64,000 nucleotides of DNA from Mizuhopecten yessoensis (lineage: Eukaryota), in the NCBI RefSeq assembly GCF_002113885.1, contig NW_018404352.1:763371-827370 (forward strand), written 5' to 3'. The notes beneath the pieces were generated by a model. That model had not been told where the DNA came from. It ran no database searches and saw only the letters and a program-made list of their open reading frames with translations. Shown here piece after piece: positions 7,772-64,000 of this stretch (positions are counted from its first letter, which is position 1; every line of letters starts with the position of its first letter). The position numbers and the translations under genes were made by a program.

Positions 7772-8094
7772 AGTATTTTTAGAAATTGTGTCACAACCCA
7801 CTAGTTCCACAACTTACAGTTCAATCCTGCAGAAAAGAAGAAAAAAAACACCAACGTTACGTTGGTGTATCTATCTCTATATTTTTGTACAATTAATCGC
7901 GAATGATGGATTTCATTTTAAGTGAAAGGGGGTGGGGCATAACATTTATTTTATTTAATCGAATATAAAAACAAAGGACAGCTTGTGAATGCACTTTTTT
8001 CATATTGCGTTAATTCTATTGGTCCTTTCCAGTGAAATATCAAAACAATATTTTATCTTTTAATATCGTGATAGGATAATCAAATAATTTACAA

Positions 8095-8660
8095 AACAAG
8101 AGGCCCAATGGGCCTGCACCGCTCACCTGGTATAAAGCTCACACTTGTAACCTTAAAAGTGATCTGAAATAAAGCTACAGGCAAAATATCAGTATTTATG
8201 ATTAAAATTCATTCAAAAGAACCTGTTATTTTTTTTTTAATATTTCACCCCAAATATTGAAAGTCAAACAAAGTCATTATGTTGAACAAATTGTATAGCC
8301 TTTCATCTCAGGTTGCAACTTGCAAAGTATCAACATCCTGGGACCCATGGTTATTCAGAAATGGTCGTTTAAAGATTTAAACAAATTTGACCCCTGTGAC
8401 CTTGAATATAACTCAAAGTCATTCACTTTAACAAACATAGTTGGCCTTGATCCCAGCATGCTACTGACTAAATATCAACATCCTGAGCCTTTTGGTTATT
8501 CATAACAAGTTCTTTAAATAGTTTGAACATATTTGCTCCTTGTGACCTTGAATATATAGAAGAAGTTGTTTAAAGTAAAATGTTGACGCCGGACGACGGA
8601 CGCCGTACGCCGCACCACGGCATAAGCTCACTTGGCACTTCGTGCCAGGTGAGCTAAAAA
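8095..8660. mobile_element. Second HINE-like copy of the same family
   Basis: Same termini as 6073-7253, ~2-3 satellite units, ggacgacggacg microsatellite and terminal hairpin gctcacttggcac-ttc-gtgccaggtgagc. Confidence 0.8.
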
Positions 8661-13206: not shown

Positions 13207-13402
13207 AAATACTTGACAGCCATATCTGCCGTTCATTTCCCAAATTAGTGATAAGTCTTACCCACTAAGATATATCCGCAATGTATGTAATTTATTTCCT
13301 TAAAAGATGATTCACTTAAGCATTGCAAAATTATACAAATTAAAGAAAATACTCCATTAATTATTGCGTTCTGTATCAATATACAAAATAAAATATAAAG
13401 TA

Positions 13403-21945: not shown

Positions 21946-24271
21946 GCCGTACACTGAAGAATACAACTCGCACGATTGTGTACGCTATAAAAGGTTACTA
22001 TCACACATTGTATATTGATATCAAACTATGGCCAGACGCATTCTCGTATGGCGTGAGTTTTAATAGTTTTCTAAATCGATATTGTATTTATCAAAAGACA
22101 GTTCTAACAGTTGATAAATAATGTAGTGAGACATCCATCACGTGCAATCTGTAATTACATACATGTCAAAATTGATAGCTTTAAGAGGGAGTATATATAT
22201 ATATAAATGTACTCTTTGAAACTCAATGAGTCTCGGGAATGCACACTACAAAAACACCCGTTGTTTTAACACCATGATGTAAAACTTTCGTAAACTATTG
22301 ATTCTGATATGGTGCTTAACATAACCACCTTTTAGAAGTTTTAGGTTCCTTGCTATAGTCACATAATTATGTTCAATATGTGAATATGTAATTTCTTGCA
22401 GCAGGATAAATCTATACTTTTGTATGCCAATATTTGGCATACAGAAGTATGTCAAACGTTGTCATATATTTCCCAAAACAAAACAAAAAAACGAAATTGA
22501 AAAGTAGCAACAAAAGCGTTTATTGTTTTTAAAAGCATGCACATAAAAAGTTATTTGGTCACCAGGACCGACAGTCTTTACCTTTCTTAAATGTCGGCTT
22601 AAAGTTTAGATATATAAAAGGAATTTTATTCAGCTGTTCATATTTTTACAAATGTAGAATTTTCTATTTATAAAAAAAATATACTTTAATTTATCTTTCA
22701 GTAAACAAAATATTGTATAGTGCGTGACCAATTCGCACAAAGTAAACTAATAATGCATGTATTGTGTAACGTGTTATAGACACTAACATGCATATATCGA
22801 GATGCTACAGGGGACATAACTCGTATTGTTCGGTTACATTACACTTTTCATTATATGTTTTGTCAAAATAAAAGCCATGAACGTAAACCTTAAGTTATTC
22901 TGCCGCTATTCAAAAACTATGTGATTTAATTATTTGCATCGGATGTCATTTTACTCTCACACAAGCAAAATTTCCCTTTATACACAATGTACTATAAGAC
23001 GTGTCGTAACGTTTGTATACAAAGTAAAACTTTGATATTACATATTTTCAGTTCAAAACTGATGAATCTTATTGAAGATATATGATAATGTATATTGTAG
23101 ATATTTCGCTACTCTTGAGCGTGTTCCAAATATCCAAACTGTCGAGATAGATGTTCTACTACACGTTTAATGTTAAATAGAGCGGGCATAGTGTAGCTGT
23201 GAGTAATACCTAAAATACTAATATATAGGAAGCGTATATATATATTTTGATTTGTTTTATAAGGCGATGCAGGAAGCCAACAAAGTGATCATTAGCTTCA
23301 TCATATGGATATTTCGTAAGTAACGAACTCATCCGGGGTACTAAAGGATGAAAGATAAAACAAGTTAATGTCTAAACTGTTCCAAAATATGTATCAAACA
23401 GCAAAAGCGTAAACTTGCCAATAAACCATTTACAAAATTACAAACTCCACTTTTTGTTATGAATCAATGGCATTTACAGCGCTATAAAATTCACAATTGT
23501 TAAGGCAGATATTGCTAAAACGTAATGTAGATGTGTGTTCTTCTATTTACTGCATACAGTAAATCTTTTTGTGTTATCTACTTTACACACTTATATTTTA
23601 CCATAAATAGCTGTTTCATTTTAAGACACATATTGGAATTTGCGCAGTGTCCATTTCGCTTTTCGAGGCCCTATTAAATATCGCGTTTTTGGATTCTGTA
23701 AGAATGTATTGCAACTTTACAAGAAATGTGATACTGACATTTCTTTCTTCCTCATGAAAAAAAGTCACAAAAATAAAAGTATTATAACCTGTCTTTCATA
23801 CAGTATTGATAAGTTCAATATGATATTAAATGTAACAGTTATGAACGATATGTCGCAGATACGGAAAAACTGAATAGAGTTGAAGAGGAAAACAAAATGC
23901 CTGCGACAAATCTATTTTATACTGCATTTTCAAAACAAAAAAATCAGTAATATATACAACATTATACATGCATCACAAATAACTCTTTCTTATTTATCAC
24001 GCGAACAGATTTTTTTTAATTATTATTTTACCGATGTCAATTTTATTTCGTCCACCAAACGCCCCCTTTTAACAGTATTTTTTTTTCATGAATGATATTC
24101 TGCTTAAACTGACCATAATCTTCAAAATTCTGATAGATCGATTGTTATCAAATGACTGTACAGCGTTTTAACTCTTAATTTTTGTTCATTAGTTTAAGTA
24201 GACTTTGTGGATGATATCTTAAGAACTTAAATTTGAATACGTGACCTGAGTTACAGTTTTATCTTTTCTCT

Positions 24272-25519
24272 CATTAACACAGTCATACATTAATGCAGTC
24301 ATACACTAACACAGTCATACACTAGCACAGTCATACATTAACACAGTCATACATTAATACAGTCATACATTAATACAGTCATACACTAGCACAGTTATAC
24401 ATTAACACAGTCATACATTAATACAGTCCATACATTTATGCAGTCATACATTAATACAGTCATACATTAACACAGTCATACATTAACACAGTCATACATT
24501 TATGCAGTCATACATCAATACAGTCATACACTAGCACCGTTATACATTAACACAGTCATACATTTATGCAGTCATACATTAATACAGTCGTACATTAATA
24601 CAGTCATACACCAGCACAGTTATACATTAACACCGTCATACATTAATACAGTCATCCATTAACACAGTCATACATTAATACAGTCCTACATTAATACAGT
24701 CCATACATTAACACAGTCATACACTAGCACAGTCATCCATTAACACAGTCATACATTAATCCAGTCCATACATTTATGCAGTCATACATTAAGACAGTCA
24801 TACATTAACACAGTTATACATTAATACAGTCATACATTAACGCGGTCATACATTAACACAGTCATACACTAGGACAGTCATACATTAACACAGTCATACA
24901 ATAGCACAGTCATACATTAACACCGTCATACATTAATACAGTCCATACATTAACACAGTCATACATTAATGCAGTCATACATTAACACAGTCATACATTA
25001 ATGCAGTCATACATTAATACAGTCATACATTAACGCAGTCATACATTAACACAGTCATACACTAGCACAGTCATACATTAATACAGTCCTACATTAATAC
25101 AGTCCATACATTAATACAGTCATACACTAGCACAGTGACTGTGCTAGTGTATGACTGTATTAATGTATGACTGCATTAACACAGTCATACATTAATACAG
25201 TCATACATTAATACAGTCATACACCAGCACAGTTATACATTAACACAGTCATACATTAACACAGTCATACATTAATACAGTCATGCACTAGCACAGTCAT
25301 ACATTAACACAGTCATACATTAATGCAGTCATACATTAATAAGTCATACACTAGCACAGTCATACATTAACGCAGTCATACATTAACACAGTCATACACT
25401 AACACAGTCATACATTAACACAGTCATGCACTAATACAGTCATACACTAGCACAGTCATACACTAACACAGTCATACACTAACACAGTCATACACTAACA
25501 CAGTCATACATTAATGCAG
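24272..25519. repeat. 16-bp minisatellite (cattaacacagtcata)n
   Basis: ~75-80 units with a short inverted patch at 25138-25175. Confidence 0.97.
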
Positions 25520-25618: not shown

Positions 25619-25809
25619 TATTCCGTCTTTTCGTATTGCAGAGTTATCTGCTCTTGATAACAGGTATTGGTTGTTACGTCATTTGTTTATGAGAGTAACG
25701 TCATCATTGTTTTGAGAAAACGACGTAATTTCCTCACACTAACTAATGACGTAACAATCAATCCCTACTCACAAGAGCAGATAACTCTGCAATACGAAAA
25801 GACGGAATA
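25619..25809. mobile_element. ~190-bp foldback MITE, copy 1
   Basis: Long TIRs tattccgtcttttcgtattgcagagttatctgctcttg / caagagcagataactctgcaatacgaaaagacggaata. Confidence 0.85.
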
Positions 25810-26062
25810 AATAAACAAAGGAGTAAACGGTAAAATTATCCAAATTCGTTAACTCAAAAAACATCTGTTTAAATGTGAACATCTGTGAGAGAACTATGTT
25901 TTCACACGAGGCATCCTAAAGAGGAGGTGTTTTTTCATTAGAAAATAACGAAGACAAATACTTATGTGTTGTATAATCAGTTATCGATTAAGAGATTTTC
26001 TTGTATCTAATCTGTTGCGATATCAAACACATCTCAATATTTTAAAGGGACGATATAAACGA

Positions 26063-26328
26063 TCAAACAACGATATTCATTAAGGTCATATATAATGTAA
26101 CACCAATGCCTGATACAGTCGAGTATATCCCAAATATCAATAGACAGTAACATATCGTGAGAGTAGCAAATCTCTGTACTGTTCCTAATAACGTAGTGGG
26201 TTTCATCTCGTCATATAAAAGCATGATTTTGACACTTGCGGGAACGATTATTGTCCCGATGTACGTCCAGAGACAGCCTGTGAATGACATCAACAACTCA
26301 AATTCCGGAACCAACAGGGTGAAGGTGC
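26063..26328 (-). CDS. SLC36-like paralog 2 last exon
   Basis: 266 nt after ttgtttgcag; TFTLLVPEFELLMSFTG...LMNIVV*. Confidence 0.9.
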
Positions 26329-29300
26329 CTGCAAACAACGGCAAAAGATTTATTTGTTACTAAAATATTGCTAATGTCTTTATGATATATTTTAAATTAA
26401 TTATCCCAATGCACATAGCATTGGTAAAATGCTAGATCATGAATTACACATCAATACAGACACGTTGATTTCCGTTATATAACAACTTATATCACAAAGT
26501 AACATAACACTCACAGACAGCAACCAGCAAGATGAAACGGAAAAGATATTCTCCGTAGTTTCGTATCCTCGCCGAGGTGATTTTACTTTGTATCCTCCGC
26601 CAACTGATATCAACAGGAACGAATACCACAACACCTGTAGTACAGTACAGGGTCAGGAAGAATAGAATCCTCAGCGATTTGTACAACCTGGGAAGTGGAT
26701 GATAGGTAGATGATTATTCCGTCTTTGCGTATTGCAGAGTTATCTTCTCTTGGGAGCAGGTATTGATTGTTACGTCATTGGGTTGTGTGAGAAAATTACG
26801 TCGTTTTCTCAAAAAATGATGACGTTACTCTCACAAACAAGTGACGTAACAATCAATACCTGCTCCCAAGAGAAGATAACTCTGCAATACGCAAAGACGG
26901 AATAATAACTTTTACATACTTGATCAAAAGATGAACAGTTTTTTGTTATGTTTCTGACACATTCTTATTATTGTCACACGTCTGGTCATATTTGGAATGC
27001 ATTCTTGAAAAGAATTATTCTTTTGGCTTATACACTGACGTGTGACTGTTTTCCGTCTATTTTTTCTGACCTCGTTCTACTGTAACCGTTTCTATTTATC
27101 ATTAGGTTCTTTGATCGTTACACATACATTCATACGTGTGAATCGGTTTCATGTCATAGCTCGTCCTAGAACCATTGGATGGTCGCAAGATATTTCCAAT
27201 AAAAATCCCTGAAATTGTCACATTACTTTGAAAGTCCAGCTAAATAGCAAAATAAATAATTTATGTATCAACTAATACCACTGTTTTGGTACTTGTTTGT
27301 CCAAAATAATGAATAATGTTCAATTATGGTCTTTTCTTGGAGTGAACATATGGTTTTTGACCCTACTAAAAACGTGACCGAGACTAGTTAGAGACCTGAA
27401 TTATTACACAAGATGTGTAATTAAGCTGCTTGTTCATTATTGAACAATACGGAACGCAGGGAAGTAATCAAGAGAAAATTGTTGTATTTGGCAAAGAATA
27501 TTGTAAAGTCTACTTCCATGTGACGTCATAAAGAGAGTTTTCACTTGCTGACTTTCAAAAAGGTAACATCAAATCCATGAAACAAACAAAAGATAAATTA
27601 GATCACATATTATGACGTCCTTAGCAATCAGAGTTTTTCAAAAGTTTCTAATAAACAAACCAGTTATTGGCTGGAAGGTCGAGTAGATACATCACGCGTG
27701 TCATTTCTCCAAATTTCAGATATCCGTAAAAACCACACGCGGCATGGAAACATGTGACAAACATCAAAGCTACACCCAGCACTCCGTTCCAGCCGTCAAA
27801 GTGTTTGGTTGTCCTCATCCTGTTACGTACTGGTAACACCTGGTATTAGAAAGGTTACATCGTATTCCTCCGTTTCTTGTTGACAAAAGGAAAAGTTTTA
27901 AGTAATGGAAATTTGACCTTTTGTTCTGTTATACTATTGACATTTTACATTTATGATCATTTGGAATTGATAAGACTCTTGGGGATTTATATATAGCCAA
28001 ATGTTCGTACAAAGTTGTACATTATCCCTCTTTAATGAGATATACATATGTTTATAGTCATTCTCATCAAGTGATAACAATCGATACGGGTCCTGTACCT
28101 TTCAAAACTATCCCATAATGCACAATATGTCCTTACTTAACGTAAACGAACATCAGCAAGCGATTACAGAGAATTTAATTATAACATGGACATAGCAAAA
28201 CGTACTTAGCAGCTAGCTATCTCAATATTCGGCGAAAAAAGATTATAATAGGATTAAGAGGTTAAAAGCTAACACTGTCATCCAGAGACTGGACTCTAGC
28301 AAATCAGTCGACTGTCTTTTTTATCACATAACTGACCCTTCGTACTATGTCAAACTGTTCTTGTCATACATATGGTAATACATAGGTGTAATACAATTTA
28401 AACATGCTACTATTGATCAAAACTGGGGGGATGTATTCCTACGCCACTGCAGTTACTACTTTTATTTACTATACCACATGATACATTTACTGGCATTCTA
28501 AATGAATTTGAAATGTTAATTTGTTATTTTCATCGCATTAAAACAAAAATATTTAAAGAGAAAAAACATCTGGAACTCCTTGACACTGCACGGGACGACA
28601 CTATTATGACCAGAGTACTTGGGTTTTAACTATATAGCGTCAGCTGAGAACACATCATTGTGTTTGAAGTTTGTTTTTTTCAAATTGTGACTGTTATGTG
28701 ATAATTATAATATTACATTCGTGTCCACGTCATATTGAATTCATTAAACTTGTTTTAATAATATGATATGCACTCGCCTCAAGCCTGGTAAATTCAATAT
28801 GACATGTCTGTACTAGCTCTGTATATAATAATATGAAGAGGTGCTGACATGCACAACTCTCAGATTCTACAGCTGGATGCAGGGAAGTCTGAACTTATCT
28901 GATGAGTAAAATATCAATACAGATCAATCAATATGTGCGCTTTCAGTTATGCGGAAACGCAAATAAATGTACGTATTTCACTAAGATATTAAATGTCAAG
29001 TCATTAATCTCTAAAAACGGTAGCTTTTGCGGCAGAAATATTTCCTAAACCTCTCTACTAAAACTGATATTTTTAACAAAATCATGAGAAACCAAAATTA
29101 TCAACTAAATATAACACGGTGTATTTTGCAGCTGCACAGTAAATTCATTTTAATAAAATTTCCTTTTGTTTTAGACAACTTACCACCCCAATTCCATCCA
29201 GTGTGAACATGACGTCGTTCGCGAATGTTGTGAATGTTAAATAATTCGGAGATTTAGCAGCTATTCTTGTGTTAACATCTGGTAGATCATGGCATATGTA

Positions 29301-49818: not shown

Positions 49819-51468
49819 TCATATTTGCATTACATGTACAGTACCACCACTACAGCCGATCCAAACATGTCCGCACATGTCGACACACACAGCCAACGGA
49901 TCTGTTACTGCATGTTTCTTGTCAAGGAGACACTTGGCCTTTCTTTCATTCCCCGATATGACGTATACCTGGTTAGTGTTATAGTCTGGTACAAATATTC
50001 TGTCATATTCATCACATGCTATATCGCTCTGCAACGTCTCTGTTATCTTCTGACCATTGTCCAGTTCCCCACTCCACTTGTGCATGATCTGGTCATATTT
50101 GTTGATGACAATCATTTCGTTACAATTCAAATAATCAGAGCCAGTGGTGACAGCTATATATCCTGTTGTCAAATTAACTATACTAAGCCCATCTCCTCCA
50201 CAGGATATTTGTCTGATCCTATCCCCAGACATGTTCAGTACCAGCATTGTTGGGGTGAGAGTAGTGACGAACACCTCGTCAGTGTCACTGATACTGATAC
50301 CTGAGGCGTTTAACGGACTGATGTCAGCAAAATCAGTCACTCGTCTGTCCTCAGATATAATGTGTATCAGCGAAGAATTCTTATACTCTGTGACCAGAAG
50401 TACTTTCTCATTGGACACGGTTAGACGCCACGGGTTAAAGTCAAGCTTGACAGACTCTGTGACGTTGCCTTCTTTGTTGACTTTGACCAATTCATTAGAT
50501 TCATATACCGACATCCATACTTGATTATCGTCAGTAGGACATATTGAGTTGATTTGTGTCCGCTGAGGCATTTGGAATGTAGAAATCATTTGAACCTGTT
50601 GACAGTCAACTTCCTTCTTTTCATACTGCACGTCTTCATTCTTCAATACTTGTAAACGCCCAAACACTGTCTTCAATTGATCTTTGTTACGTTCACCAGG
50701 GACGAAGTGATGTTGGCGAGGTACCACGCTCTTTTTATTTACATCATACAGCGGTTTGGTGGTTTTCATTCTTCTAGTCATTTCAAATAAGGATGCACTA
50801 GATTTCGTTTCTGTGGCTTGTTCCACATCTTCCATCAGTTGTTTGATCTCTTTGACGTTTTTTTCGTGAGATTGACAATCTCGAGTGTGGGATATTTCTT
50901 CTTCTTCAACCAAGGACGATAACTCGACCAAAACCGAGTCCGCTATGAAATTAATTTCTTCTTTCAGTTTAAATCTTTGCGTTTGTACTGATTGTCGGAT
51001 GACTTCCACGTTCTCTTCGAACGATTTGCTCACCTCATGACGCTTTGATATATTGTCATTAAAATGGTCTAAATTGGAGTCCAACGTTATCAATAGCTCT
51101 CGAAGGAACTGTTTTTGTACGTCAATTTCCAGTTCAATGTTTTTGAAAACGTGTTGGCTATGTTTCTCGGTAAAACAAGTTGCGCACATCATTATTTCAC
51201 AATCACAACAATACAGGTCACATGATTTACCGTGGTGTGTCTTACATACCTCCGGGAGAAATGTCTGATTTTGTTTGATCGCCCTTGTAATTGGTACAAC
51301 GGCATCATTTCGTGTCTTTCTCGCGCGTTGGTGACTCTCTTTACAGCCGTCACATAAAGCCTCTTGACAGTCATTACAGTACCAGTTAACGTCCTGTATG
51401 TTTTCACACCAAGCACACGGATCAGGCACGTGCACCAGAGCACTCCGGGTGGCTAGTTCACTTGACAT
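49819..51468 (-). CDS. RING-less TRIM-like protein copy B, intact single exon, 549 aa (B-box1, B-box2, coiled coil, NHL-like beta-propeller; TRIM2/3/71-like architecture)
   Basis: CAWC..WYCNDCQEALCDGCKESH; CKTHH..LYCCDC..CATC..HSQH; heptad-rich middle; propeller-like C-terminus (IACDEYDRIFVPDY, PLAVCVD..GHVWIG). Confidence 0.9.
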   Translation of the reverse strand: MSSELATRSALVHVPDPCAWCENIQDVNWYCNDCQEALCDGCKESHQRARKTRNDAVVPITRAIKQNQTFLPEVCKTHHGKSCDLYCCDCEIMMCATCFTEKHSQHVFKNIELEIDVQKQFLRELLITLDSNLDHFNDNISKRHEVSKSFEENVEVIRQSVQTQRFKLKEEINFIADSVLVELSSLVEEEEISHTRDCQSHEKNVKEIKQLMEDVEQATETKSSASLFEMTRRMKTTKPLYDVNKKSVVPRQHHFVPGERNKDQLKTVFGRLQVLKNEDVQYEKKEVDCQQVQMISTFQMPQRTQINSICPTDDNQVWMSVYESNELVKVNKEGNVTESVKLDFNPWRLTVSNEKVLLVTEYKNSSLIHIISEDRRVTDFADISPLNASGISISDTDEVFVTTLTPTMLVLNMSGDRIRQISCGGDGLSIVNLTTGYIAVTTGSDYLNCNEMIVINKYDQIMHKWSGELDNGQKITETLQSDIACDEYDRIFVPDYNTNQVYVISGNERKAKCLLDKKHAVTDPLAVCVDMCGHVWIGCSGGTVHVMQI

Positions 51469-54400
51469 CTTTGTTAGATTATACTATATATTTATCGAAC
51501 AAACAACTTTCTAACCCGTCAAAGTTTCCTTTGATTTTAAACTGAACGTCGATTACTTGTCCTTTGCTTTCACTGAACTCATGTGATAAATAAAAATAGC
51601 AGTCATGCCTATTGGCGTGTATAAGGCCTTTTCGTTGTAATATAAAGTCAAAGGTTCAACGAGGTGCCCGGATCTGGGCATATATAATACACAACAAATC
51701 GTGAATTGCGAACTGTAAGGTATGCTTTATATTTAGATATTGAACGATTTCGACAAGTTTGAAAAGTGGATATATTTTGTCATTGCGATCAAAACAGTGA
51801 CTTTTTTAACAACTTTTCGATTTAAGGGATAGTTTTGGGGAATTCTGTAATGCCTCAGTTACAGTTATAAATTGCTTGATCGACTGATGTTTATTTTTAA
51901 TAGCCGCATAGACTATCGATATCAACCACCAACACCCTCTCCCCAAGTTCCCCCCTTTTTGTTTCATTCTATTTTTTTTATATTTAGAACTTGTGCAGAA
52001 CTTGTATAAATGTTTTCATATAGAATCTTACCCACTGAGTTTGTTCTTATCTAATGTCCCAGCGTAGGCTAAATTGATGTAACGGTTATATATGGTCATG
52101 CATGCGAGTTAAAATGGCGATTCCAAGTTAGAAATACCTTACAGTTATCGTGTTGGACGTGGTAAACGCATATGGTTCTGTACCAAACCAGGTATGGAAA
52201 ACTATGGAGCATCACTATGTCCAAGATCATATTATCAACTTTATTGTCAGCCTTTTATTGGGGATACATTTGAGATTCAGCTTTGATCAAGTTATAATAA
52301 ATCTGGATAAACATAAAGATTGGAATCATTACAGGGTACATACGATCGATGTGGTCGATACAATTCTTGTTATTTAAAGATAGCACAACATTGTTATATA
52401 GAATGTGAAATTAAATTACTCGTCAAGGATTTTTTTACTTTGTCCTAATAGACTTTTCAACTGATTCAGCTTCATATGAAAAGCAAAAATAAATTGGCCA
52501 GAAGAGGGTATGAGTTTGTTCCTATAGAAATGCCTACAGCATAACCGGACACACAATGATATTGTCAGTGAAGAACTCAGTCATTCTCACAATTTCATAC
52601 GCTCTTCTCAAAAACCGGTGGTGTATTGAGGACAAGCTCAGCCTATTTATTTGGTAGATTCCGTTTATTTCCGGCGTTTTAATGATTCATGTTATCTTCA
52701 TCAGTATGTCACAGGCGGCTGTTGTTGAGTTTCTATACGGAAGTAGATCGCGATGAAATTCTTGCTCTCTGTAATGTGTTTCCTGTTATCTCGGTATGCC
52801 GGATTATTGCAACAACTATGTATTTTGTATGAAATTTTGTTGTCAAAATATTAGAGATATATCGTTTTTTCATACATTTCGCTGCATCCCATCTTAAGAG
52901 ACATCCAATATAGGACCTCATGCAGAATCGGCGGTTTTTCCTAGGTTAAATATTGATCTGATCGCGGTAAGCTTCCCTTTCAAAGGTCGTCAGGTTTGAA
53001 TGTGTCGGCAATATGGATAGACTTTCAATGACGGATAGAAATCGTGCGATTGCGATGCTACAATCTGGGGCAGCAGAACATCATGTGTCGCATGTGATAA
53101 TTTTAACAAGGTTTACGATTAAATGTCTTTTGAAGTGTTATTGACGAGTATGACATGTCAACCAACTCCCTGGAGCCGGACGTCGACGTGAAATGGCGCC
53201 ATGTCAGGACCGCTTCATTCTTATTCCATGCATAGCGTCGAAACAGAGCGACGTTTACCGTTTTCCATGAGCAAACGCTGTGTTTAAGAAGTTAACAGAA
53301 ATTGCGGACACCCACGATATTGACGTTACAAGTGTATCTTTCCTGTGTACAGTTGTGACGTCTAAATCACGTGAAAAAATTTTTTGAATTATCTATTCGT
53401 CGTACTGTTTGACATATTCCCTCTTTGTTAGTTGACGGTATTCTTGATTCTGTGTAAAATGTGTCTCCAATAATTCATTTACGATTTAAAATCAACTTTA
53501 TTTACCTTGATCTGAATGGCCGGGAAATGAGCTTAAACCTCGTATTGGCCCAATTGAAATCTTGTACATCAATTCTTTAATGTTTTCGCTGCGCTAGCGG
53601 TAGATGGTTATGTTTTTAAAAAAGTCTCACTGTAGAGTCACATCTTACATGAAGTAGTCATGTGATGTTTTGGTGTACTAAAGTCACGTGACCTGTGCAT
53701 AATGTTTTTCCATGCTGACATTTTGAAAATCTCCTTAAAAATCAGTTACCCTCCTCCTCCCCTAATTTATATCCACCTTTATGTACTATTGTGTAAAAAT
53801 GCAATTGGTGCACATCTTTTTTTTTTGTAATTGTTTTATTTTTCACTACATAAAGGTCTTCACACACATTCTCTTTCACACACAAAAAAATGTATATGGA
53901 TGTGTACATGCATCATCATCATCATAACTACAATACACCTCACCCATAAACAATCTTCATCCTCATCATCATTATGAAAATATAGTTACCAATGCATCAG
54001 TACCTATCTCGCATAATAAACATCATCATCCTCATTATCATCATCATCATTATAATCTTCATTGCATTAATACCTCTCACACATAAACAATCATCTACCC
54101 TCATAATCATCTTCATGAAAATATAATTACAAATGCATCAATGCATGTCTTACACTATAAACATCATCATCATCATCATTGCCTCAATATGCTTCACATA
54201 ATACACAATTATCAGTATCATCATTATCATCATTGCATTACTATCTCTCACACAATAACAATCATCAACCCTCATCATCATCATCGTCATCATTATGAAA
54301 TTATAACTACCAATGTCTCAATATTGTTGCACATCTTCATTTTATATTTTGTTTCATTTGTTGTACATCTTTTAATTACAATAACTTCAGATGGGTGACG

Positions 54401-56044
54401 TTTACTTTGAAGCAAGCCCCATCATTTTTGGTTCTTTGAACACCTTATTATAAAAATAACACGAAGATGTATACATATGTTCGATTTCTGGGATTTAGAA
54501 ATAAATGTTCTTTTTCGACAACTTAAGTTTTTGATAATTTATCGACAAAAAACATAGCAGAGTATACCCTGTGTGTGCTGTTGGGTTTAGTGCAGACTTA
54601 ACACGATAATATAAGTAATGGTGCGGCCATTCTATTATCCACCAGACACGCATCAGGTGCATCATTAGGGTACTTAATCAATGTTCGGGGTGAGCAAAAA
54701 TATTTATTCTGAAAAAATATGCAGACAAAAAGAATGTACGTATAACGATATCGGATTTCCGATATCAAGCTCTTAGATCCATATAACCTCTTATTAAATC
54801 ACCAACAGGTAACAATCAATAAAAAAGAAGATATTCCTTTCAAATATTCGTAGCACACACACATAACACCTGTACATTGCCATCTTTATTACTCGCAGGC
54901 AAACTCAATATTCACTTAAACTACGTTATGGAAGCACCACCTCACTGTTTACGTCACCACATTAAAGCTTATAACTAATTATACAATTCGTGATTCAAAA
55001 TAAAATAATGGTACTACAAGATGTAATAATTTGCTGTCTTCGTTTTCATATTTACTCTATTTTCAAGACATTGTTATTGTGTTACATGTATGCACAAAAC
55101 AAAAAACACAGAAAATACCACTATTAAAGCCAATGATGCATTTTCATAGCGAAAACAAACCGGAAAAGATTATAAATGATGAAGACAAGATAACAAATAA
55201 TATAATAGAAACAAGTTTAACTATTTTATGATCGTAATTTACCAACATTGCCAGCAACAAAAACCCATTTAAATATACAAGCATAGATTTACAAAGAGAG
55301 GCCGGCCACACCATAAAAACAAGCCTCAACAAATCTTAAAAATATGCAAGTATGAAAAGTTGTGAAATACCCACTTGACGAGGAAGAGCGGGACGTACAA
55401 TATAATTTCACCCTTGAGTACACACTTGACTGATTTCAGTGAAACATTAAAAAGGGTGCGATCATCAATGAATAGGTTTGTTTATCAAGTAAGGTCATGA
55501 ACAATGTAACTGCATATGAGTTTGAGTAGAAATAGCTTATATTGCATCCGCTTTATTCTGAATGGAGTGGCCCATTAAACTGACTGTATTTCCCGTATGT
55601 TTTTGCTGAAAGCTTGAAATACTTGAGTAAACTATCGTGCTTATACATATAATCAATTGTAAATAAGTTTTGAATAGAAAATCATACCATTTATTTGGTG
55701 TTGTTTATTGTATTATTGCAAAACTGACCGATTAATCGGTAACTCGGTCGGGAGATTTTGACTAAACTTCGTTCGGTTTGACAATCTTTGTATTTACCTG
55801 TCATCTTTTAGTATGAATGGTGGTCGTTAATATATCCACGTTGTCAACTGCAGCTGTACAGTGATCTATTTTGACAAACGTATATAGTGTTTTCTTGATA
55901 CTACAAAGAAACACAACACATGGCCTGTTAAAACTCGTTATAGGATTTCCCACTGACGATATATGTAAGGTGAAAACAGAGACAGATTGTCTCAGTAAAC
56001 CATACAAAGTCGGTGTTCATTCATTCAAATATTGTCGCATTTGT

Positions 56045-57695
56045 TCATATTTGCATTACATGTACAGTACCACCACTACAGCCGATCCAAACATGTCCGC
56101 ACATGTCGACACACACAGCCAACGGATCTGTTACTGCATGTTTCTTGTCAAGGAGACACTTGGCCTTTCTTTCATTCCCCGATATGACGTATACCTGGTT
56201 AGTGTTATAGTCTGGTACAAATATTCTGTCATATTCATCACATGCTATATCGCTCTGCAACGTCTCTGTTATCTTCTGACCATTGTCCAGTTCCCCACTC
56301 CACTTGTGCATGATCTGGTCATATTTGTTGATGACAATCATTTCGTTACAATTCAAATAATCAGAGCCAGTGGTGACAGCTATATATCCTGTTGTCAAAT
56401 TAACTATACTAAGCCCATCTCCTCCACAGGATATTTGTCTGATCCTATCCCCAGACATGTTCAGTACCAGCATTGTTGGGGTGAGAGTAGTGACGAACAC
56501 CTCGTCAGTGTCACTGATACTGATACCTGAGGCGTTTAACGGACTGATGTCAGCAAAATCAGTCACTCGTCTGTCCTCAGATATATTGTGTATCAGCGAA
56601 GAATTCTTATACTCTGTGACCAGAAGTACTTTCTCATTGGACACGGTTAGACGCCACGGGTTAAAGTCAAGCTTGACAGACTCTGTGACGTTGCCTTCTT
56701 TGTTGACTTTGACCAATTCATTAGATTCATATACCGACATCCATACTTGATTATCGTCAGTAGGACATATTGAGTTGATTTGTGTCCGCTGAGGCATTTG
56801 GAATGTAGAAATCATTTGAACCTGTTGACAGTCAACTTCCTTCTTTTCATACTGCACGTCTTCATTCTTCAATACTTGTAAACGCCCAAACACTGTCTTC
56901 AATTGATCTTTGTTACGTTCACCAGGGACGAAGTGATGCTGGCGAGGTACCACGCTCTTTTTATTTACATCATACAGCGGTTTGGTGGTTTTCATTCTTC
57001 TAGTCATTTCAAATAAGGATGCACTAGATTTCGTTTCTGTGGCTTGTTCCACATCTTCCATCAGTTGTTTGATCTCTTTGACGTTTTTTTCGTGAGATTG
57101 ACAATCTCGAGTGTGGGATATTTCTTCTTCTTCAACCAAGGACGATAATTCGACCAAAACCGAGTCCGCTATGAAAATGAATTTCTTCTTTCAGTTTAAA
57201 TCTTTGCGTTTGTACTGATTGTCGGATGACTTCCACGTTCTCTTCGAACGATTTGCTCACCTCATGACGCTTTGATATATTGTCATTAAAATGGTCTAAG
57301 TTGGAGTCCAACGTTATCAATAGCTCTCGAAGGAACTGTTTTTGTACGTCAATTTCCAGTTCAATGTTTTTGAAAACGTGTTGGCTATGTTTCTCGGTAA
57401 AACAAGTTGCGCACATCATTATTTCACAATCACAACAATACAGGTCACATGATTTACCGTGGTGTGTCTTACATACCTCCGAGAGAAATGCCTGATTTTG
57501 TTTGATCGCCCTTGTAATTGGTACAACGACATCATTTCGTGTCTTTCTCGCGCGTTGGTGACTCTCTTTACAGCCGTCACATAAAGCCTCTTGACAGTCA
57601 TTACAGTACCAGTTAACGTCCTGTATGTTTTCACACCACGCACACGGATCAGGCACGTGCACCTGAGCACTCCGGATGGCTAGTTCACTTGTCAT
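56045..57695 (-). pseudogene. RING-less TRIM-like gene copy C, 1-nt insertion frameshift at ~57174-57180
   Basis: 1651 nt versus 1650 in copy B; atgaaaatgaatttc versus atgaaattaatttc. Confidence 0.78.
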
Positions 57696-58082
57696 CTTTG
57701 TCTGATTATACTACATATGTATCGCACAAACAACTTACTATCCTGCCGAAGTTTTCTTTTAAATTTAACAGAACGTTCCCTTTACTTATCGTTTGCTTTC
57801 GAAAATGAACACAGCGGTCATATCGATAGCGGTATTCAAAGTTTGTCTATGTAACGCAAGGTTCAAGGTTCAACGAGGTGTACTAAGTGGCAAATATAAT
57901 ACACAACAAATCGTGAATCATGAATTGGACTAGTTATTCCATGTTTATATCTTTACAAATTTCGACGACATTTGGAACGTTGATGTATTTTTTCCTTTCG
58001 ATCAGTATATTGCCTTTTTTTGAATATTCAGCATAAACAGTATGTATATATATATATGGTCCTTCGCTGCTGTTTATTCTAA

Positions 58083-58444
58083 TGTGGCGGTACTGGACTG
58101 GGTCGAACACCGATGACCAAGTAGGGTATCCTGGGTTCGAACCCCAGTCTGGCTGTTACATTTTCTCTTTCTTCTATTATAAAATTGGTGAGCTGGTCAA
58201 CCCTTGTTTCAAACATTGGGAGTATGCTTAGTCAGCAAGGGGATACCCAAACTTTGGTTTTAAATAGTTGTCTTCGGGGGCGAAGACTTAGAAAAAGAAG
58301 GGAGGAAATGTAGCAGAACTGGACTGTGTCGATCAATGGTGACCTATGCAGGTAGCTCAATTGCTAAAGCGTTTGGCTAGAGTTCAGAGGGTCCCAGGTT
58401 CGAACCCCAGTCTGGCCGTTACATTTTCTCTTTCTCCTGTTATA
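58083..58444 (+). mobile_element. Miniature non-autonomous LTR retrotransposon with tRNA-derived LTRs
   Basis: LTRs at 58083-58181 and 58309-58444 (TG...TA), tgg PBS-like start after LTR1, polypurine tract 58290-58308, 4-bp TSD ctaa on both sides. Confidence 0.75.
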
Positions 58445-59330
58445 CTAATATTGTGCTTGTAAAACAAGGTATTGAAATGAATCTGTAAAAATTAATTGTG
58501 ATAGTCAAAAAGTTGATTAGATTTTATAATCGAGTCCCTGGTTGCATTTTCCATTTTTTCTGCCGATATAATTAATTTGGGTCAGTAGACAGCGCCATTC
58601 CCCAAATAGTTGACCTTGTGTTTTTTCAAGTCAAGTCTAAAAATCTCATAAAGTCACCGATTTCATGAAACCTAAAAAAGGAAATCTGGAAAAGTATGTT
58701 TGTTTAGCTTTTTATCATCTCTGCCGTAGTGCGGGGTCACTATTGCCCTTGAAAAACACATGATTACTGTCAGCATGTAATGCGTCTGTTACATGCTGTG
58801 TTAACCAGAGAGTATGGTCACTGCAATGTCTATCTAATCCATCTTTGCCAGTCGGAAATATTACGCAAAAATGAAAAGGAGAAAACACACTTTTTTCTAG
58901 TCTTTTCTAGACACTCTGAACAGATTTTTTTTAATTAATGACTTTTCCATGTTTCTGAATTGATGCCATTACCTTGTATGTACTAGCTATAGGTAGATGG
59001 TGGTTTTAAGACTATCATATATTTAATTATTTTTTTATAAAGGTTGTCATCCCGTTACCTGTCACTACGCCCAAGTGTAAGGCCTTGTTTGGCTTTGAGG
59101 TGAATGATTCAGAAAAAGATTGCTTAGCATTTAAAAAGATAAGCAAATATCTTCAATGAAAATCACTACATGTGCTTTAGAACTTAGTGTGGTTTTCAGA
59201 AAATTGGATTTTATGCAACCTCTTTAACAGTACAAAACTTTGCATACATGTATTTAGAATTGTATATGCTCTGTCTAAAGTGAAATTACAATTAAGTATG
59301 ATTTGAATGATTTTTCCTTTGTTTTAACAG

Positions 59331-59426
59331 GAAGAATACTTGACTGTGATAAAAAGAGTGGATGATAACTGGGTGGAAGGGAAGAAAGGGGAGAAAATTG
59401 GCATCTTCCCCATCTCCTTTGTGGAG
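59331..59426 (+). CDS. Isolated SH3-domain exon, SH3RF/POSH-like
   Basis: Pyrimidine tract + aacag / 96 nt / gtaagt; [32 protein letters not shown]. Confidence 0.75.
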
Positions 59427-60939
59427 GTAAGTGTCTGAACAAGAGTTATATTCCTTTGATTGTTTTAAAATAAAGTCAGGCAACAAGTATCCAATTTTGT
59501 CCTATGGGACTTGTTATTTCAACTATTAATTCTAAGTCATTCTCCTATTCCTATCTTATCAGTAAGAATGTACAAACTGGAATGTGGTTTTTTTTTGAAA
59601 TAATAATCATCCATGTCGTGTTATTTCAGATAGGAACAAGTTTTTTTTGTTTTATATAGTTCCTTTTTCCAAATTTGGTGTTTATTTCATATAATCAAAA
59701 CAACAAAAATGAAATTTTGAATATGTATATATATTTGCTCAAGAATATCTTTCAATTCATTTTCGACTGCAGGGGTAGTTTTAGGGACTGCGGTTTGATC
59801 GAAACAAATTTATGAAATCGGTATCGATTTCCCCCTCATATTCCACTACTCTGTTGTACAATGATTTGATAATGGTTATATATAGAAATTACTCAGCGGC
59901 TTTGTTCAAATATAAGGTGTCAGAGTAGGCTAAATTTACGTAACATAACGGTCTGTAGATGCTAATATTTCTTTTGATATTTACTTATTATGGCGATGCA
60001 TCCAAGTTTAAAGTGACGATTTTAATAGCTCGAAGACGACTATTGGGGGTATATATTGTATGGTAGACTTCGATTCTCGTGATCGTGTTCCAAGAATCAG
60101 AGGGATTCATGACCTATACAATACGTTTAAAGATTTAACTACATTTACAGCAAAGCCGTGAGGAGGCAATATTATATATTTTTTTAGTTTTGTAAGTCGA
60201 TGCTGAAAATCAACAATGTGATCATTTAATTGACGCGATGGCCATTTCGTTAATTCAGTACTCATAAGGGGAACTTAAAATGAAAAGATTGAAAAAATTA
60301 AATGTCCCAAATGTTCCAAAATATTTTCGGAAGGGAAAAGTGCCTATATACCATTTATCATAAATTAAAAGTTTTTATTTAAATACTTTTTTATTATAAT
60401 TTCTTGTAAACCGTGTAACATATATTCTTTTTAAACACTATGGCCAATTTCGGGGACAAATAGCCCACCTGCTTGGTCTACCACCTTATGACACACACTT
60501 ATCAATAGAAAAACGAAGTACGTAAGCGTCAATAAATGTAAGCTGGAGACAGTGTCACTGTGGAGCCGTGGATGGTTTCGTATCTGTATTGTATAGAGAT
60601 ATTCACAAACGATGACATCACATTTAAAGACGACTGTGTCAATTTGTCAACTGCAATAGTAATAATAATTAACAACACACAAACAAATATGTGAATCATT
60701 AGCGTATCATTATATCACACGATGTGAAAGATATTTTAATTTTTACATGCATGCAGTTTTTATAAGCACGTGTATTGATCAGATAATCTGTTCATAGAGA
60801 ATGACAACACATGAAAAAAATGAGCCGTGAACCCCTTCTACACAGTGGTAAAATCCTTTGTGAAGCAGAAAGCGTTGCAGTATCGTGGATGTTATAAGAT
60901 GCAACAGTTCTTTATTTTAAAAAAAAGTGGTGCATTTCA

Positions 60940-62475
60940 TTAAATAACAATATTCATAAAGGTCATATACAATGAGACTGTAACGCCTGACACAGTTGAG
61001 TATATTCCAAATATCAGCAGAATAAAACATACTACCAGGGTAGCATATCTTTGTACTTTTCCTGTTAACGTATCCGGCTTTATCTCGTCGTAGGAAAGCA
61101 AAAGTTTGGCACTTGTAGGCACGACTATTACTCCAAAGAACCCCCAGACACAGCCTGTTAATGACATCAACCATTCGAATTCTGGAACCAAAAGGGTGAA
61201 GATGCCTACAAAAGATAATATATACTTCGCTGATGCATTGTATCGACATGGCGTTAATTTGATATCACACTGCATATTTCATTGTTAAACTGTAGAACTG
61301 GAATGACCGATCCACAGACCTGCATTAATTGGATTTATGTTATACACGACAAAAATACAGTAAACATATAGTGATAGCGAAGTTTAACCAAGATGAATGA
61401 CATAGTAACACTTCACTCACAGACAGCAACCAGGAAGATGAAACGAAAAACATATTCTCCGTAGTTTCGAATTAACTTCGAGGTGAATCTACTTTCTATC
61501 CTTCTCCAACCAACGTCAACGGGAACGAATACCACGACACTCGTTGTACAGTACAATGTGAGGAGGAACATGATCTTTAACGATTTGTACAACCTGGAAA
61601 TAAAATAAAGAAAAGATGAGAAGTGGAGTCCTGTTTGTGCCGTTTGAAAATGAATATTTTTTTTTAACATCATTCTTCTGATTTGATGAGTGTTGTTAAA
61701 TGTTTAGGTAACATTTATCTAACCGCTTCCGCCATGCTAAGGATTTCAAATACATATTATTTACTATTATGAAATCTGTTTCTGTATTTTAGACAATAAG
61801 TCTATTTACCGAAACTGACATTGCATTAAAAGCATCGACTTGGCTGGCATAAACCTTATTCATAAGCCCATTCCATGAAACATTGTATTGGAAACTTGAA
61901 TTAATAAATACTTTATAAACTCGAGGATAGAACAAAATCACTGAACAATGCCAATTATTGAATTTTGTGGAAATGAAAGCTTTGTCAGTTATTTTCACCA
62001 GATTATAGGATATTGACTGAGACAAATTATATGTTAATATCACGTTAAAATTCCGTTGTATTCACTCCTCAATTCATCTCAACTGTATTTCTTAATTGAT
62101 ATATAAGAAGATTAATTATTTGCATTCATCATAAAAATACGAGATGGAACGTGATAACGTAATCAACAAGTGTTGCAATGGTCCAACAGCTGATATTTAG
62201 AATGGTAACATAAAGTCCATACACTGCAATATGCAATCACAAGTGACCAAGTCTTGGGCAAATGATAGCTTCGCTTCACTAGGCCAATACACATACCAAT
62301 TATCGTTCGGGAGGTCAAGCAGATACATAACGTGCGTTAGTTCTCCAAATTTCAGATATCCGTAAAAACCACAGGCGGCATGAAAACATGTGACAACCAT
62401 CATAACTACACCCAGCACTCCGTACCAGCCGTCAAAGTGTTTGGTTGTCCTCATCCTGCTACGTACTGGTAACAC
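60940..62475 (-). CDS. SLC36/PAT-like amino acid transporter, paralog 3 (last three exons; rest beyond right edge)
   Basis: Exons 62475-62297 (179 nt), 61593-61421 (173 nt) and 61205-60940 (266 nt) have the same sizes and phases as paralog 2 and are highly similar to it. Confidence 0.9.
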
Positions 62476-63051
62476 CTGGTATGAGAAAGTTTGCATCATA
62501 TTACATATTCAGGAAGTGATGTACGTGACGACTCGTGCAATAACAATCTCTGAACATAAGGAACTAGTAAGATCTCCAGTGATTTCTATACGCTTAAAAC
62601 GTTCTTCCAAACTGACGTATAGCTTCCGCTTTTTTACTGTCAATACACGTACGTTTTGTTCAATTCAACACCATTATCCTTACCTAAAATTTCTTTCTAT
62701 TTGTTGTTTGTTTTCCCTATTTTTTGTTTTTTTTTATATATCAGTTCCTTTTGTTTATATACAGTTTCTGTAATCTGAGAACAGCATCTAAGAATGGGAG
62801 CGAACTGGCTTAATAATAATATAACCACTAGATCTGCAGACATTTGTGATGAGGATTAAGGCGATTCTATGTAAAGACAACCTCGGCGCAGACTTTCTCA
62901 GCCGGGCTATGAACCAGTAATTATAGGTTAAAGCCATAAACCTGCCGTTTATGTTGGACATTTTCCACATAAGTGTTGTCAGGATATCAAAAGAATATCT
63001 TTCCAGTTATAATGAGATAATGGGAAATAACAGATTCCTCTTATTCACAGG

Positions 63052-64000
63052 TTGTTACGGACATACTCTTAGAAAGGGGGAAGTGTCCTGGTATGAAATG
63101 TGTTTCTTTATTTTTTATACCTTTAGAATTAAGTTATATGTTTATGGACTAGCAATATATCAAGCGCAACTTGGCGGGAATTGAATTTGGTCGCTTGTTG
63201 TTTTATCCTGCTTTTCAATGTAGATATCGGCAGCTAAGGGGTTCACCTGTATTATGCCTGGTGGGATTTTTTAGCCAAACAGAAATAAGATCGATCGATC
63301 TCCCGGAAAAGGAGAAACCATTCACCTGGGCGGCGGGATGGTGTCAAGTGGTAGGGAAAGTGTCTATATATTGCAGTTCAGGGCTAGTTGTGGCCACGGA
63401 ACAGTTCCGTGGTGAACGTATTATTGGGTGGAGCTGGGCATGGCTTGAGCCAGGGCAGTACCAGTTCAAGATACATTGCATTGACGAACGACCTGAACTT
63501 TATCCGGACATCTTTGTGTACGTCTATAGCTGACCACACGGACTATCCCTCTACGGCTCGATCAGTACATCAACGTGGACGGCGATATACCTGGGATTCA
63601 CGCGCCGGGTCCCTCTCGTTATTGTGAAGTGGTAAAAGATACAGTAGCATCCAATATGTGACATTCCGAACAGAACTAGGTATTTGAACTGTGCATTGGA
63701 ACTGTGGATTAGAACTGTTTATTTGAAAGAACAGTCATTATAATTTCTTAGATCATGTAATACTTAGTCTTACAGTGAGTTAGAAAGTTTTCAGTCACTA
63801 TTATGTTATTGTAGTATGGTTATTACTTTGGACAACTAATAAATGGGTTATTTTGAATCTTCATATTGAAATATAATTTGCTAGTCATATGCTAAATATT
63901 GAAATACCTCAGTAACCACAGCAGTCAGTATTGTAATTTTTTATCTGGCTTGTGGAGTGGATTTTTGATAATATAGCACTTTATTCTTTGTTGAATTTTC
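63052..64000. mobile_element. Possible LTR of an intronic retroelement (runs off window)
   Basis: tgttac start, GC-richer block with TATA-like ctatatat at ~63364; no partner LTR or coding region visible. Confidence 0.25.

What the first reader, a model, noticed from the sequence alone, without database searches (positions are those of the whole stretch)
58021..59757. Orphan intact SH3RF/POSH-like exon inside a 1.7-kb segment interrupting a TRIM-like gene's upstream region
Seen: a phase 0-0, 96-nt exon with textbook splice sites (59331-59426, + strand) encodes the second half of an SH3 domain, and I found no other exon of such a gene in the 64 kb. The upstream region of copy C aligns with that of copies A/B to ~58020 and resumes at ~59760 (ggggtagtttt, gtaggctaaatt, tggcgat..ccaagtt), so the exon sits in a segment the sister copies lack. 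That segment is bracketed by tatgtatatatat (58041, 59722) and looks CpG-poor by eye. Known: the peptide resembles the second SH3 of SH3RF/POSH E3 ligases. Inference: either a piece of a housekeeping gene body was captured and dropped here, or the SLC36 and TRIM-like arrays are nested antisense in very large SH3RF introns.
Basis: partly seen in the sequence, partly recalled or inferred. Interest (0 to 1): 0.75.

Follow-up and report, generated by a model that had tools for sequence, protein, structure and literature searches.

The report
Dead duplicated fragment of POSH gene
The "orphan" SH3 exon is part of a 1.7-kb inverted, decaying copy of a piece of the real SH3RF/POSH gene that lies about 105 kb away on the same scaffold; it was dropped in front of a TRIM-like gene, and it is an ordinary gene-fragment duplicate, not a nested gene.

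Summary
The exon exists as described: 59331-59426, AG/GT sites, second half of an SH3 domain. It sits in a ~1,735-bp insertion (about 58017-59752) that sister copies A and B lack. A much closer paralogous region, D (C1025:886-894 kb), also lacks it.

The insertion is an inverted copy of C1025:713,521-715,964 (minus strand). Identity is 88% overall: 90% in the 5' part and 97% in the 3' part. That source lies inside a compact gene with a RING exon and four SH3 domains, the SH3RF/POSH architecture. The gene spans 706.5-718.6 kb, wholly outside the window and on the opposite strand, so the nesting alternative is refuted and the "captured piece" alternative holds.

Its donor is broken (GT>AT) and the conserved Asp of the ALYDY-type motif is now Gly. 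A 713-bp stretch holding the parent's next exon is absent.

The only spliced RNA contig over these exons carries the parent's letters, and two raw RNA-seq runs show no reads on the insert. There are no TIRs, no poly(A), no long target-site duplication and only two copies in the genome. This points to DNA-level templated or microhomology repair rather than transposon capture.

The insert keeps the parent's CpG depletion (0.44, against about 1.0 in the flanks). This is an ordinary finding of low interest.

The parts
58017..59752 (+). Inserted segment (about 1,735 bp; ends uncertain by about 3 nt) in the upstream region of TRIM-like copy C
   Evidence: Paralogous region D is collinear to 58016 and from 59751 on, with a TT overlap. 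A and B also lack it. The junctions are seen in independent runs: X1 record 3 spans 57843-58162 and X16 record 15 spans 59093-59799.
58018..59720 (+). Part homologous to the SH3RF/POSH gene segment C1025:713,521-715,964 (minus strand), i.e. an inverted copy
   Evidence: blastn gives 1447/1653 identities plus a 68/78 tail.
58081..58175 (+). tRNA-derived SINE copy 1 (32-nt internal deletion relative to the parent), copied along with the intron
   Evidence: It is also present at the same place in the parent.
58307..58441 (+). tRNA-derived SINE copy 2 (B-box GGTTCGAACCC), copied along with the intron
   Evidence: 1,636 first-look candidates genome-wide. Depth is 1,299 against about 16 in DNA run X16. 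ARAGORN calls no tRNA.
59043..59138 (+). It has 3 changes against the parent: Gln>Lys at 59073, Asp>Gly at 59092 and a silent change at 59120.
   Evidence: The parent version is spliced to the next exon in an RNA contig.
59139..59140 (+). Destroyed splice donor (parent GT, copy AT)
59331..59426 (+). The reported exon: second half of the second SH3 domain, 96/96 identical to the parent exon, with AG and GT sites kept
59636..59640 (+). Point where 713 bp of the parent are missing. The missing stretch holds the parent's next 41-nt exon.
   Evidence: The RNA contig of X1 continues after 59426 with letters that lie in that 713-bp stretch.
59721..59752 (+). About 30 nt at the right junction without clear parental or target origin (filler). 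It repeats TTTTGAATAT and ATGTATATATAT from the insert's left end.
57132..57695 (-). 5' ORF of TRIM-like copy C (two B-boxes). The insert begins about 320 nt upstream of its ATG. The gene body continues in a second ORF at 56045-57157.

Best explanation
Window 58017-59752 is a non-functional, unprocessed partial duplicate of the scaffold's own SH3RF/POSH gene.

Shown:
- About 2.4 kb of that gene was copied at the DNA level. The piece runs from the end of the intron after the SH3-1 exon (with two resident SINEs), through the two exons that together encode SH3-2 and the intron between them, to part of the next intron.
- The copy was inserted in inverted orientation about 105 kb away, about 320 nt upstream of a TRIM-like gene copy. 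This happened after that region had duplicated into C and D.
- The copy has since decayed: one donor site is lost, a conserved SH3 residue is changed, and indels of 713, 32 and 27 bp are present.
- The reported exon is unchanged only because the surrounding 600 bp are still 97% identical to the parent.
- The insert still carries the CpG-poor composition of its parent gene body, inside a CpG-normal neighbourhood.

Inferred:
- The copying was done by double-strand-break repair or replication template switching that used the nearby gene as an ectopic template. The joints show 2-4 nt of T-rich microhomology on the left and a short, partly self-templated filler on the right.
- It was not done by a transposon or by reverse transcription.
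- The fragment does nothing today.
For: - Source locus: a search of the organism's own genome finds exactly one other locus, C1025:714310-715532 plus 713521-713597, on the opposite strand. The full alignment runs over 58018-59720.
- Source gene architecture: RING exon at 718424-718546. SH3 domains at 716073-716183, 714519-714930 (split over two exons), 710642-710794 and 706551-706697, all on the minus strand.
- Source gene identity: the best solved relative of SH3-4 is human SH3RF1 (7nzd, E=1e-24, 30 bits ahead of the next hit). For SH3-1, SH3RF1 7nzc is second best. POSH is described as a RING finger plus four SH3 domains (PMC12263621).
- The parent's exons have AG/GT sites. The copy's first exon has AT at its donor.
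- RNA: a 2,286-nt spliced contig in run X1 joins the two exons. It carries the parent's letters at 59073 and 59092 and runs on into the parent's neighbouring exons.
- Empty sites are seen in A, B and D.
- Mobile-element hallmarks are absent: no TIRs of 20 nt or more and no poly(A), and only two copies in the genome.
- CpG o/e is 0.44 in the insert and 0.36 in the parent segment, against 0.97 and 1.04 in the flanks.
- Raw RNA-seq runs X20 and X23 (1.7-1.9 billion letters read each) put no reads on 58452-59900.
Against: - Identity to the parent is uneven: 90.0% over 58110-59009 against 97.3% over 59010-59609 (Fisher p=2e-8). Simple neutral decay of one event does not predict this. Later gene conversion from the parent, constraint on the parent's exon-proximal intron, or fast-evolving SINE-rich sequence must be invoked, and none was tested.
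- Run X1 has low-depth contigs (about 5.7) that match the copy exactly at 58846-59059 and across the left junction. These are either genomic DNA in the library or weak unspliced transcription.
- The repair mechanism rests only on junction anatomy. The right boundary of parental homology is ambiguous (59717-59733).
The first half alone has no significant SH3 hit.
Confidence: 0.87

Rival explanations
1. Transposon-mediated capture (Helitron- or Pack-MULE-like transduplication): a mobile element picked up the gene fragment and carried it here.
For: Short direct repeats occur at both ends: TTTTGAATAT 10/10 at 58018 and 59715, and ATGTATATATAT 12/13 at 58042 and 59723. The fragment contains two SINEs.
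Against: - The SINEs sit at the same positions in the parent, so they were passengers.
- There are no terminal inverted repeats of 20 nt or more.
- The ends do not have the 5'-TC...CTRR-3' form that, from general knowledge, marks Helitrons.
- The empty site in D shows at most a 2-4 nt T-rich overlap, not a target-site duplication.
- Only the parent and this copy exist in 988 Mb.
- The left TTTTGAATAT is itself part of the parental sequence.
Confidence: 0.06
2. The copy is a living part of a transcript. It could be an exonised SH3 half-domain in a chimeric gene, or a regulatory or antisense RNA source tied to the TRIM-like gene or to SH3RF, kept similar to the parent by selection or gene conversion.
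For: Exon 2 has both splice sites and 0 changes in 96 nt (P about 0.04 at the local intronic rate). The 600 bp around the exons are far more like the parent than the rest. Low-depth copy-specific contigs appear in run X1, whose RNA status is a guess.
Against: - Exon 1 has changed at the neutral rate (3 in 96) and has lost its donor and a conserved Asp.
- Taking both exons together, 3 in 192 is not different from the intronic rate of 13 in 405.
- No joints at 59331 or 59426 other than the parent's mRNA appear.
- Runs X20 and X23 show no reads on the insert.
- Half an SH3 domain cannot fold on its own (general knowledge).
Confidence: 0.05
3. The exon is a genuine exon of a very large SH3RF gene in whose introns the SLC36 and TRIM-like arrays are nested.
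For: None beyond the intact splice sites.
Against: - A complete RING + 4xSH3 gene lies at 706.5-718.6 kb on the minus strand, with a stop codon right after SH3-4.
- No SH3_9 hit lies on the + strand of this scaffold.
- The segment is absent from paralog D.
- The spliced RNA carries the other locus's letters.
Confidence: 0.01
4. Assembly mis-join: the segment was pasted in by the assembler.
For: It is an inverted near-copy of sequence on the same scaffold.
Against: - Contigs from two other studies cross the junctions. X1 record 3 spans 57843-58162 with 146 nt inside the insert. X16 record 15 spans 59093-59799.
- Depth inside the insert equals that of the flanks (about 16) in X16.
- A 7% divergence from the parent is not what a mis-assembly of the parent's reads gives.
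Confidence: 0.01

Closest known systems
Unprocessed (duplicated) partial pseudogene / gene-fragment duplicate
   Same: The copy keeps introns and splice signals, covers only 2 of the parent's exons, lies on the same chromosome piece as the parent, carries disabling changes, and shows no sign of use.
   Different: It is very small (1.7 kb) and inverted. It lies inside another gene family's promoter region rather than at the edge of a large segmental duplication. Its divergence from the parent is strikingly uneven.
Templated insertions at repaired double-strand breaks / microhomology-mediated template switching (FoSTeS/MMBIR, polymerase-theta end joining)
   Same: It is a copy-and-paste of a nearby sequence in either orientation, with 2-4 nt junction microhomology, a short filler partly repeating adjacent sequence, and no transposon hallmarks.
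   Different: The process was not observed. It is inferred from one old, mutated junction pair, and the insert is long compared with typical end-joining fillers.
SH3RF1/POSH E3 ligase-scaffold gene (the parent)
   Same: The parent has an N-terminal RING and four SH3 domains in that order. SH3-4 is closest to human SH3RF1 among solved structures. The copied exons encode its SH3-2.
   Different: The window holds only a fragment, not a member of the gene family. The Rac-binding region of the parent was not examined.
Helitron / Pack-MULE gene-fragment capture
   Same: A genomic (intron-containing) gene fragment is found at a new site.
   Different: There are no element termini, no TIRs, no real target-site duplication and no further copies.

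Membership tests
SH3RF/POSH gene (applies to the parent locus C1025:706.5-718.6 kb) | N-terminal C3HC4 RING finger | tested here: met
   The regex finds one RING on the minus strand at 718424-718546. Pfam zf-RING_2, zf-C3HC4 and zf-C3HC4_2 score E about 3e-9, above their cut-offs.
SH3RF/POSH gene (applies to the parent locus C1025:706.5-718.6 kb) | Four SH3 domains downstream of the RING on the same strand | tested here: met
   SH3_9 hits at 716073-716183, 710642-710794 and 706551-706697, plus the split domain at 714519-714930. The architecture is as described in PMC12263621.
SH3RF/POSH gene (applies to the parent locus C1025:706.5-718.6 kb) | Individual domains closest to SH3RF proteins rather than to other SH3 proteins | tested here: inconclusive
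   SH3-4: SH3RF1 7nzd is best by 30 bits. SH3-1: SH3RF1 7nzc is second. SH3-3: GRB2 and sorbin rank ahead of SH3RF1. SH3-2 second half: sorbin and STAC3 are best, SH3RF only at E about 0.05. The RING gives only generic RING or TRIM hits.
SH3RF/POSH gene (applies to the parent locus C1025:706.5-718.6 kb) | Rac-binding region between SH3-2 and SH3-3; E3 ligase activity | not tested
   No model for the region is at hand. Activity is not testable with these tools.
SH3 domain (applies to the window's exons) | Match to an SH3 profile over the curated cut-off | tested here: inconclusive
   Second half: SH3_9 22.7 bits (cut-off 30) and SH3_1 21.0 bits (cut-off 22.9), E=9e-5 and 2.5e-4, covering profile positions 19-49. 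First half: no hit. The joined two-exon model was not searched.
Unprocessed partial pseudogene / gene-fragment duplicate | A parent locus with the same exons and the same flanking introns | tested here: met
Unprocessed partial pseudogene / gene-fragment duplicate | Incomplete and disabled relative to the parent | tested here: met
   It holds 2 exons only. The donor is GT>AT at 59139 and Asp>Gly at 59092. The 713 bp with the next exon are missing.
Unprocessed partial pseudogene / gene-fragment duplicate | Not expressed as a spliced message of its own | tested here: inconclusive
   The only spliced contig carries the parent's letters, and two raw RNA runs are blank. Only about 19% of two runs were read, and X1 has low-depth copy-specific contigs of unknown nature.
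Processed pseudogene / retrocopy | Intronless, poly(A) tail, 7-20 nt target-site duplication | tested here: not met
   Introns are retained. There is no A-run at either end. The overlap at the empty site is only 2-4 nt.
Transposon-captured gene fragment (Helitron, Pack-MULE and the like) | Element termini (TIRs or TC...CTRR), target-site duplication, multiple genomic copies | tested here: not met
Nested gene within a host intron | Other exons of the host gene on the same strand on both sides | tested here: not met
   All SH3 and RING hits on the scaffold are on the minus strand at 706-719 kb.

The most novel reading that the evidence does not exclude
The 600 bp around the two SH3 exons are kept 97-100% like the parent by ongoing gene conversion or selection. 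On this reading the copy is used, for instance as a cassette exon in a chimeric transcript started near the TRIM-like promoter, or as a source of RNA complementary or identical to SH3RF pre-mRNA that tunes the parent gene.
Probability: 0.04. Interest if true: 0.5.

Novelty: new member of a known kind. Interest (0 to 1): 0.18.

Why it matters
It matters little beyond annotation. It shows that a textbook-looking exon with perfect splice sites can be a relic, and gene predictors may wrongly call it.

It is a clean, datable example of a small inverted duplicative insertion, because the parent, the copy and an empty paralogous site all lie on one scaffold. That makes it usable as a case study of templated break repair in an invertebrate genome.

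The retained CpG depletion marks the fragment as a compositional fossil of a (presumably methylated) gene body placed in CpG-normal DNA. The methylation itself was not tested. Such a fossil could in principle be used to follow how fast CpG content re-equilibrates.

Tried and rejected
1. Presence/absence polymorphism. Run X16 has a contig that joins 58016 to 59760 with CAATCTT between them. I first read it as an empty allele. It is not: its eight differences and the seven junction letters are exactly those of paralogous region D in the reference itself (C1025:889.4-889.84 kb). No evidence for polymorphism remains.
2. tRNA gene. ARAGORN finds none in 57000-60500. The tRNA-like stretches are SINEs.
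3. Naming the exon from solved structures. The half-domain is closest to sorbin and STAC3, not SH3RF, so the peptide alone does not identify the gene. The genomic context of the parent does.
4. Naming the RING with the PDB and the ESM Atlas. Only generic RING or TRIM clusters came back.
5. Selection on exon 2. Zero changes in 96 nt has P about 0.04 at the local intronic rate, and exon 1 has changed at that rate, so no case can be made.
6. Other shared segments between the window and the 100 kb upstream. Only repeats turned up, so there is no larger rearrangement around the insert.
7. A circular or rolling-circle intermediate, suggested by the left-end motifs recurring at the right end. This was not pursued. 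The right-end motif can also be aligned at about 70% to the parent's own continuation, so the repeat may be partly accidental.
8. The large protein searches were not used, because family scans and context settled the identity.
9. The two exons were not joined for a search.
Full report
**Setting**

The window is G000:C1025:763371-827370 (+) of a 988-Mb animal genome in 82,659 contigs. The species is not given. The SINE content and gene families look molluscan, but that is my impression and not a test.

Positions 43.5-58.0 kb hold three tandem units of about 6.2 kb (A, B, C). Each carries a minus-strand gene with two B-boxes and an NHL-like propeller. Only B is one open frame; C is split into two ORFs. 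The finding lies just upstream of C, to its right.

**The observation**

- The 96-nt exon at 59331-59426 is as described. It has an acceptor ...ttttaacag and a donor gtaagt, an open frame of 32 codons, and a match to positions 19-49 of SH3_9. The scores are E=9e-5 at 22.7 bits for SH3_9 and E=2.5e-4 for SH3_1. Both are under the whole-domain cut-offs, as half a domain must be.
Positions 59043-59138, 192 nt upstream, encode the first half of the same domain, with an ALFxFE motif in the right register.
- The segment is missing from A and B, whose sequences run straight across the site. C is only about 70-75% like A/B here, so that comparison is soft.
- A much better comparator turned up outside the window. 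Region D (C1025:886013-893727) is collinear with window 54115-63957 at 93-96% identity and lacks 58017-59750/59752. It reads ...TATATTGACTT|CAATCTTTTTTCGAC...
- The bracketing motif is real: 12/13 at 58042 and 59723, plus 10/10 TTTTGAATAT at 58018 and 59715.
- The CpG poverty is real: o/e 0.44 in the insert against 0.97 and 1.04 in the flanks.

**Where the segment comes from**

A search of the whole genome with 58440-59720 finds one other locus, on the same scaffold and the opposite strand. Aligned in full, window 58018-59636 matches C1025:715964-714310, and 59640-59717 matches 713597-713521.

- The copy includes two tRNA-derived SINEs that sit at the same places in the parent, both SH3 exons, and the intron between them.
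- It lacks 713 bp of the parent's next intron, 32 nt inside SINE 1, and 27 nt of the intron between the exons.
- The parent's exons have AG and GT sites. In the copy the first exon's donor is AT (59139). That exon also carries Gln>Lys (59073), Asp>Gly in the conserved ALYDY-type motif (59092) and one silent change (59120).
- The second exon is 96/96 identical.

**What the parent is**

On the minus strand within 12 kb lie the following:

| Feature | Coordinates on C1025 |
|---|---|
| C3HC4 RING exon, preceded by an ATG | 718424-718546 |
| SH3-1 | 716073-716183 |
| SH3-2, split over two exons | 714835-714930 and 714519-714614 |
| SH3-3 | 710642-710794 |
| SH3-4, followed at once by a stop codon | 706551-706697 |

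RING plus four SH3 domains is the POSH/SH3RF1 architecture (PMC12263621). Among solved structures, SH3-4 is closest to human SH3RF1 (7nzd, E=1e-24, 30 bits ahead of the next), and for SH3-1 SH3RF1 is second best. The SH3-2 half-domain by itself is closer to sorbin and STAC3.

The copy starts about 100 nt downstream of the SH3-1 exon.

**RNA and DNA reads**

- Run X1 holds a 2,286-nt contig that joins 59136/59138 to 59329/59331. It has the parent's letters at 59073 and 59092.
- That contig is preceded by the end of the SH3-1 exon. It is followed by letters that lie inside the parent's 713-bp stretch, a 41-nt exon with a gtaaga donor.
It is the parent's message, not the copy's.
- Two raw RNA-seq runs (about 1.7-1.9 billion letters read each) put no reads on 58452-59900.
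- X1 also has low-depth contigs (about 5.7) identical to the copy at 58846-59059 and across the left junction (57843-58162). X1's RNA status is a guess, so these may be genomic DNA.
- They do show, together with X16's contig at 59093-59799 and even depth (about 16) through the insert, that both junctions exist in samples from other studies. The insert is not a mis-join.

**A false lead**

X16 also has a contig that skips 58016 to 59760 with CAATCTT between. I first took it for an empty allele. Its eight differences and those seven letters are exactly those of region D in the reference. It is the paralogue, and there is no evidence of polymorphism.

**How it got there (inference)**

- Introns are retained and there is no poly(A), so it is not a retrocopy.
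- There are no inverted termini of 20 nt or more and no Helitron-type ends. The empty site shows at most a 2-4 nt T-rich overlap. The genome has only parent and copy. It is therefore not a recognisable transposon capture.
- The left joint shares a T-run between the target (..GCCTT) and the parent (..ATTTTGAATAT..).
- The right joint has about 30 nt of filler (59721-59752) that repeats motifs from the insert's own left end.
- This anatomy fits repair of a break, or a replication template switch, that copied from the nearby gene. I give this about even odds as the specific mechanism. That the insert is a DNA-level duplicate fragment I hold at about 0.87.

**Timing**

The insert is absent from D, so it is younger than the C/D duplication. 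Copy-parent mismatch is 104/1480 (7%), against 4-6.5% for C-D. The two are roughly the same age within rate noise.

**Unexplained**

Identity to the parent steps from 90.0% (88/883 mismatches, 58110-59009) to 97.3% (16/597, 59010-59609), p=2e-8. Possible causes are gene conversion from the parent, constraint on the parent's exon-proximal intron, or faster change in the SINE-rich part. None could be tested without an outgroup.

Within the 97% part, exon 2's zero changes have P about 0.04 at the intronic rate (13/405). Exon 1 changed at that rate (3/96). There is no case for selection on the copy.

**Nesting**

The full coding region of the SH3RF gene lies 45-57 kb before the window on the other strand. 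No SH3 hit lies on the + strand of the scaffold.

Exons were searched one by one by reference.
- The large protein searches were not needed.

**Verdict**

It is an ordinary dead gene-fragment duplicate, of low interest.

Noticed in passing
G000:C1025:886013-893727 (L017), against window 54115-63957: A second copy (D) of the whole TRIM-like C region lies 68 kb downstream on the scaffold. It is 93-96% identical and collinear apart from the 1.7-kb insert. The TRIM-like family is therefore spread by segmental as well as tandem duplication.
   Followed up: partly
window 58110-59609: Identity of the copy to its parent steps from 90.0% to 97.3% at about 59010 (p=2e-8). Possible gene conversion between loci 105 kb apart and inverted. 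Unresolved.
   Followed up: partly
window 58081-58175 and 58307-58441: A tRNA-derived SINE family with B-box GGTTCGAACCC. It has at least 1,636 first-look candidates in the genome and about 80-fold excess depth in a DNA run.
   Followed up: partly
window 13279-15700: A long tandem array of a 31-nt unit (more than 69 copies), G+C 0.41-0.45 with positive GC skew, in an otherwise 34% G+C region.
   Followed up: no
window 24208-25200: A tandem array with an 8/16-nt period and strong negative GC skew.
   Followed up: no
window 6241-8584: A 146-nt tandem repeat. It has relatives at C1025:753.2-754.9 kb and inside an intron of the SH3RF gene (716967-717537).
   Followed up: no
window 25619-26904: Nested inverted repeats of about 100 nt (90-94% complementary), with a relative at C1025:671091-671278. 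MITE-like.
   Followed up: no
window 49819-51468 against 56045-57695 (minus strand): TRIM-like copy B is one 549-aa frame (two B-boxes plus an NHL-like propeller, no RING found). Copy C is split into 187-aa and 370-aa ORFs. No C3HC4 RING pattern was found anywhere in the window.
   Followed up: partly
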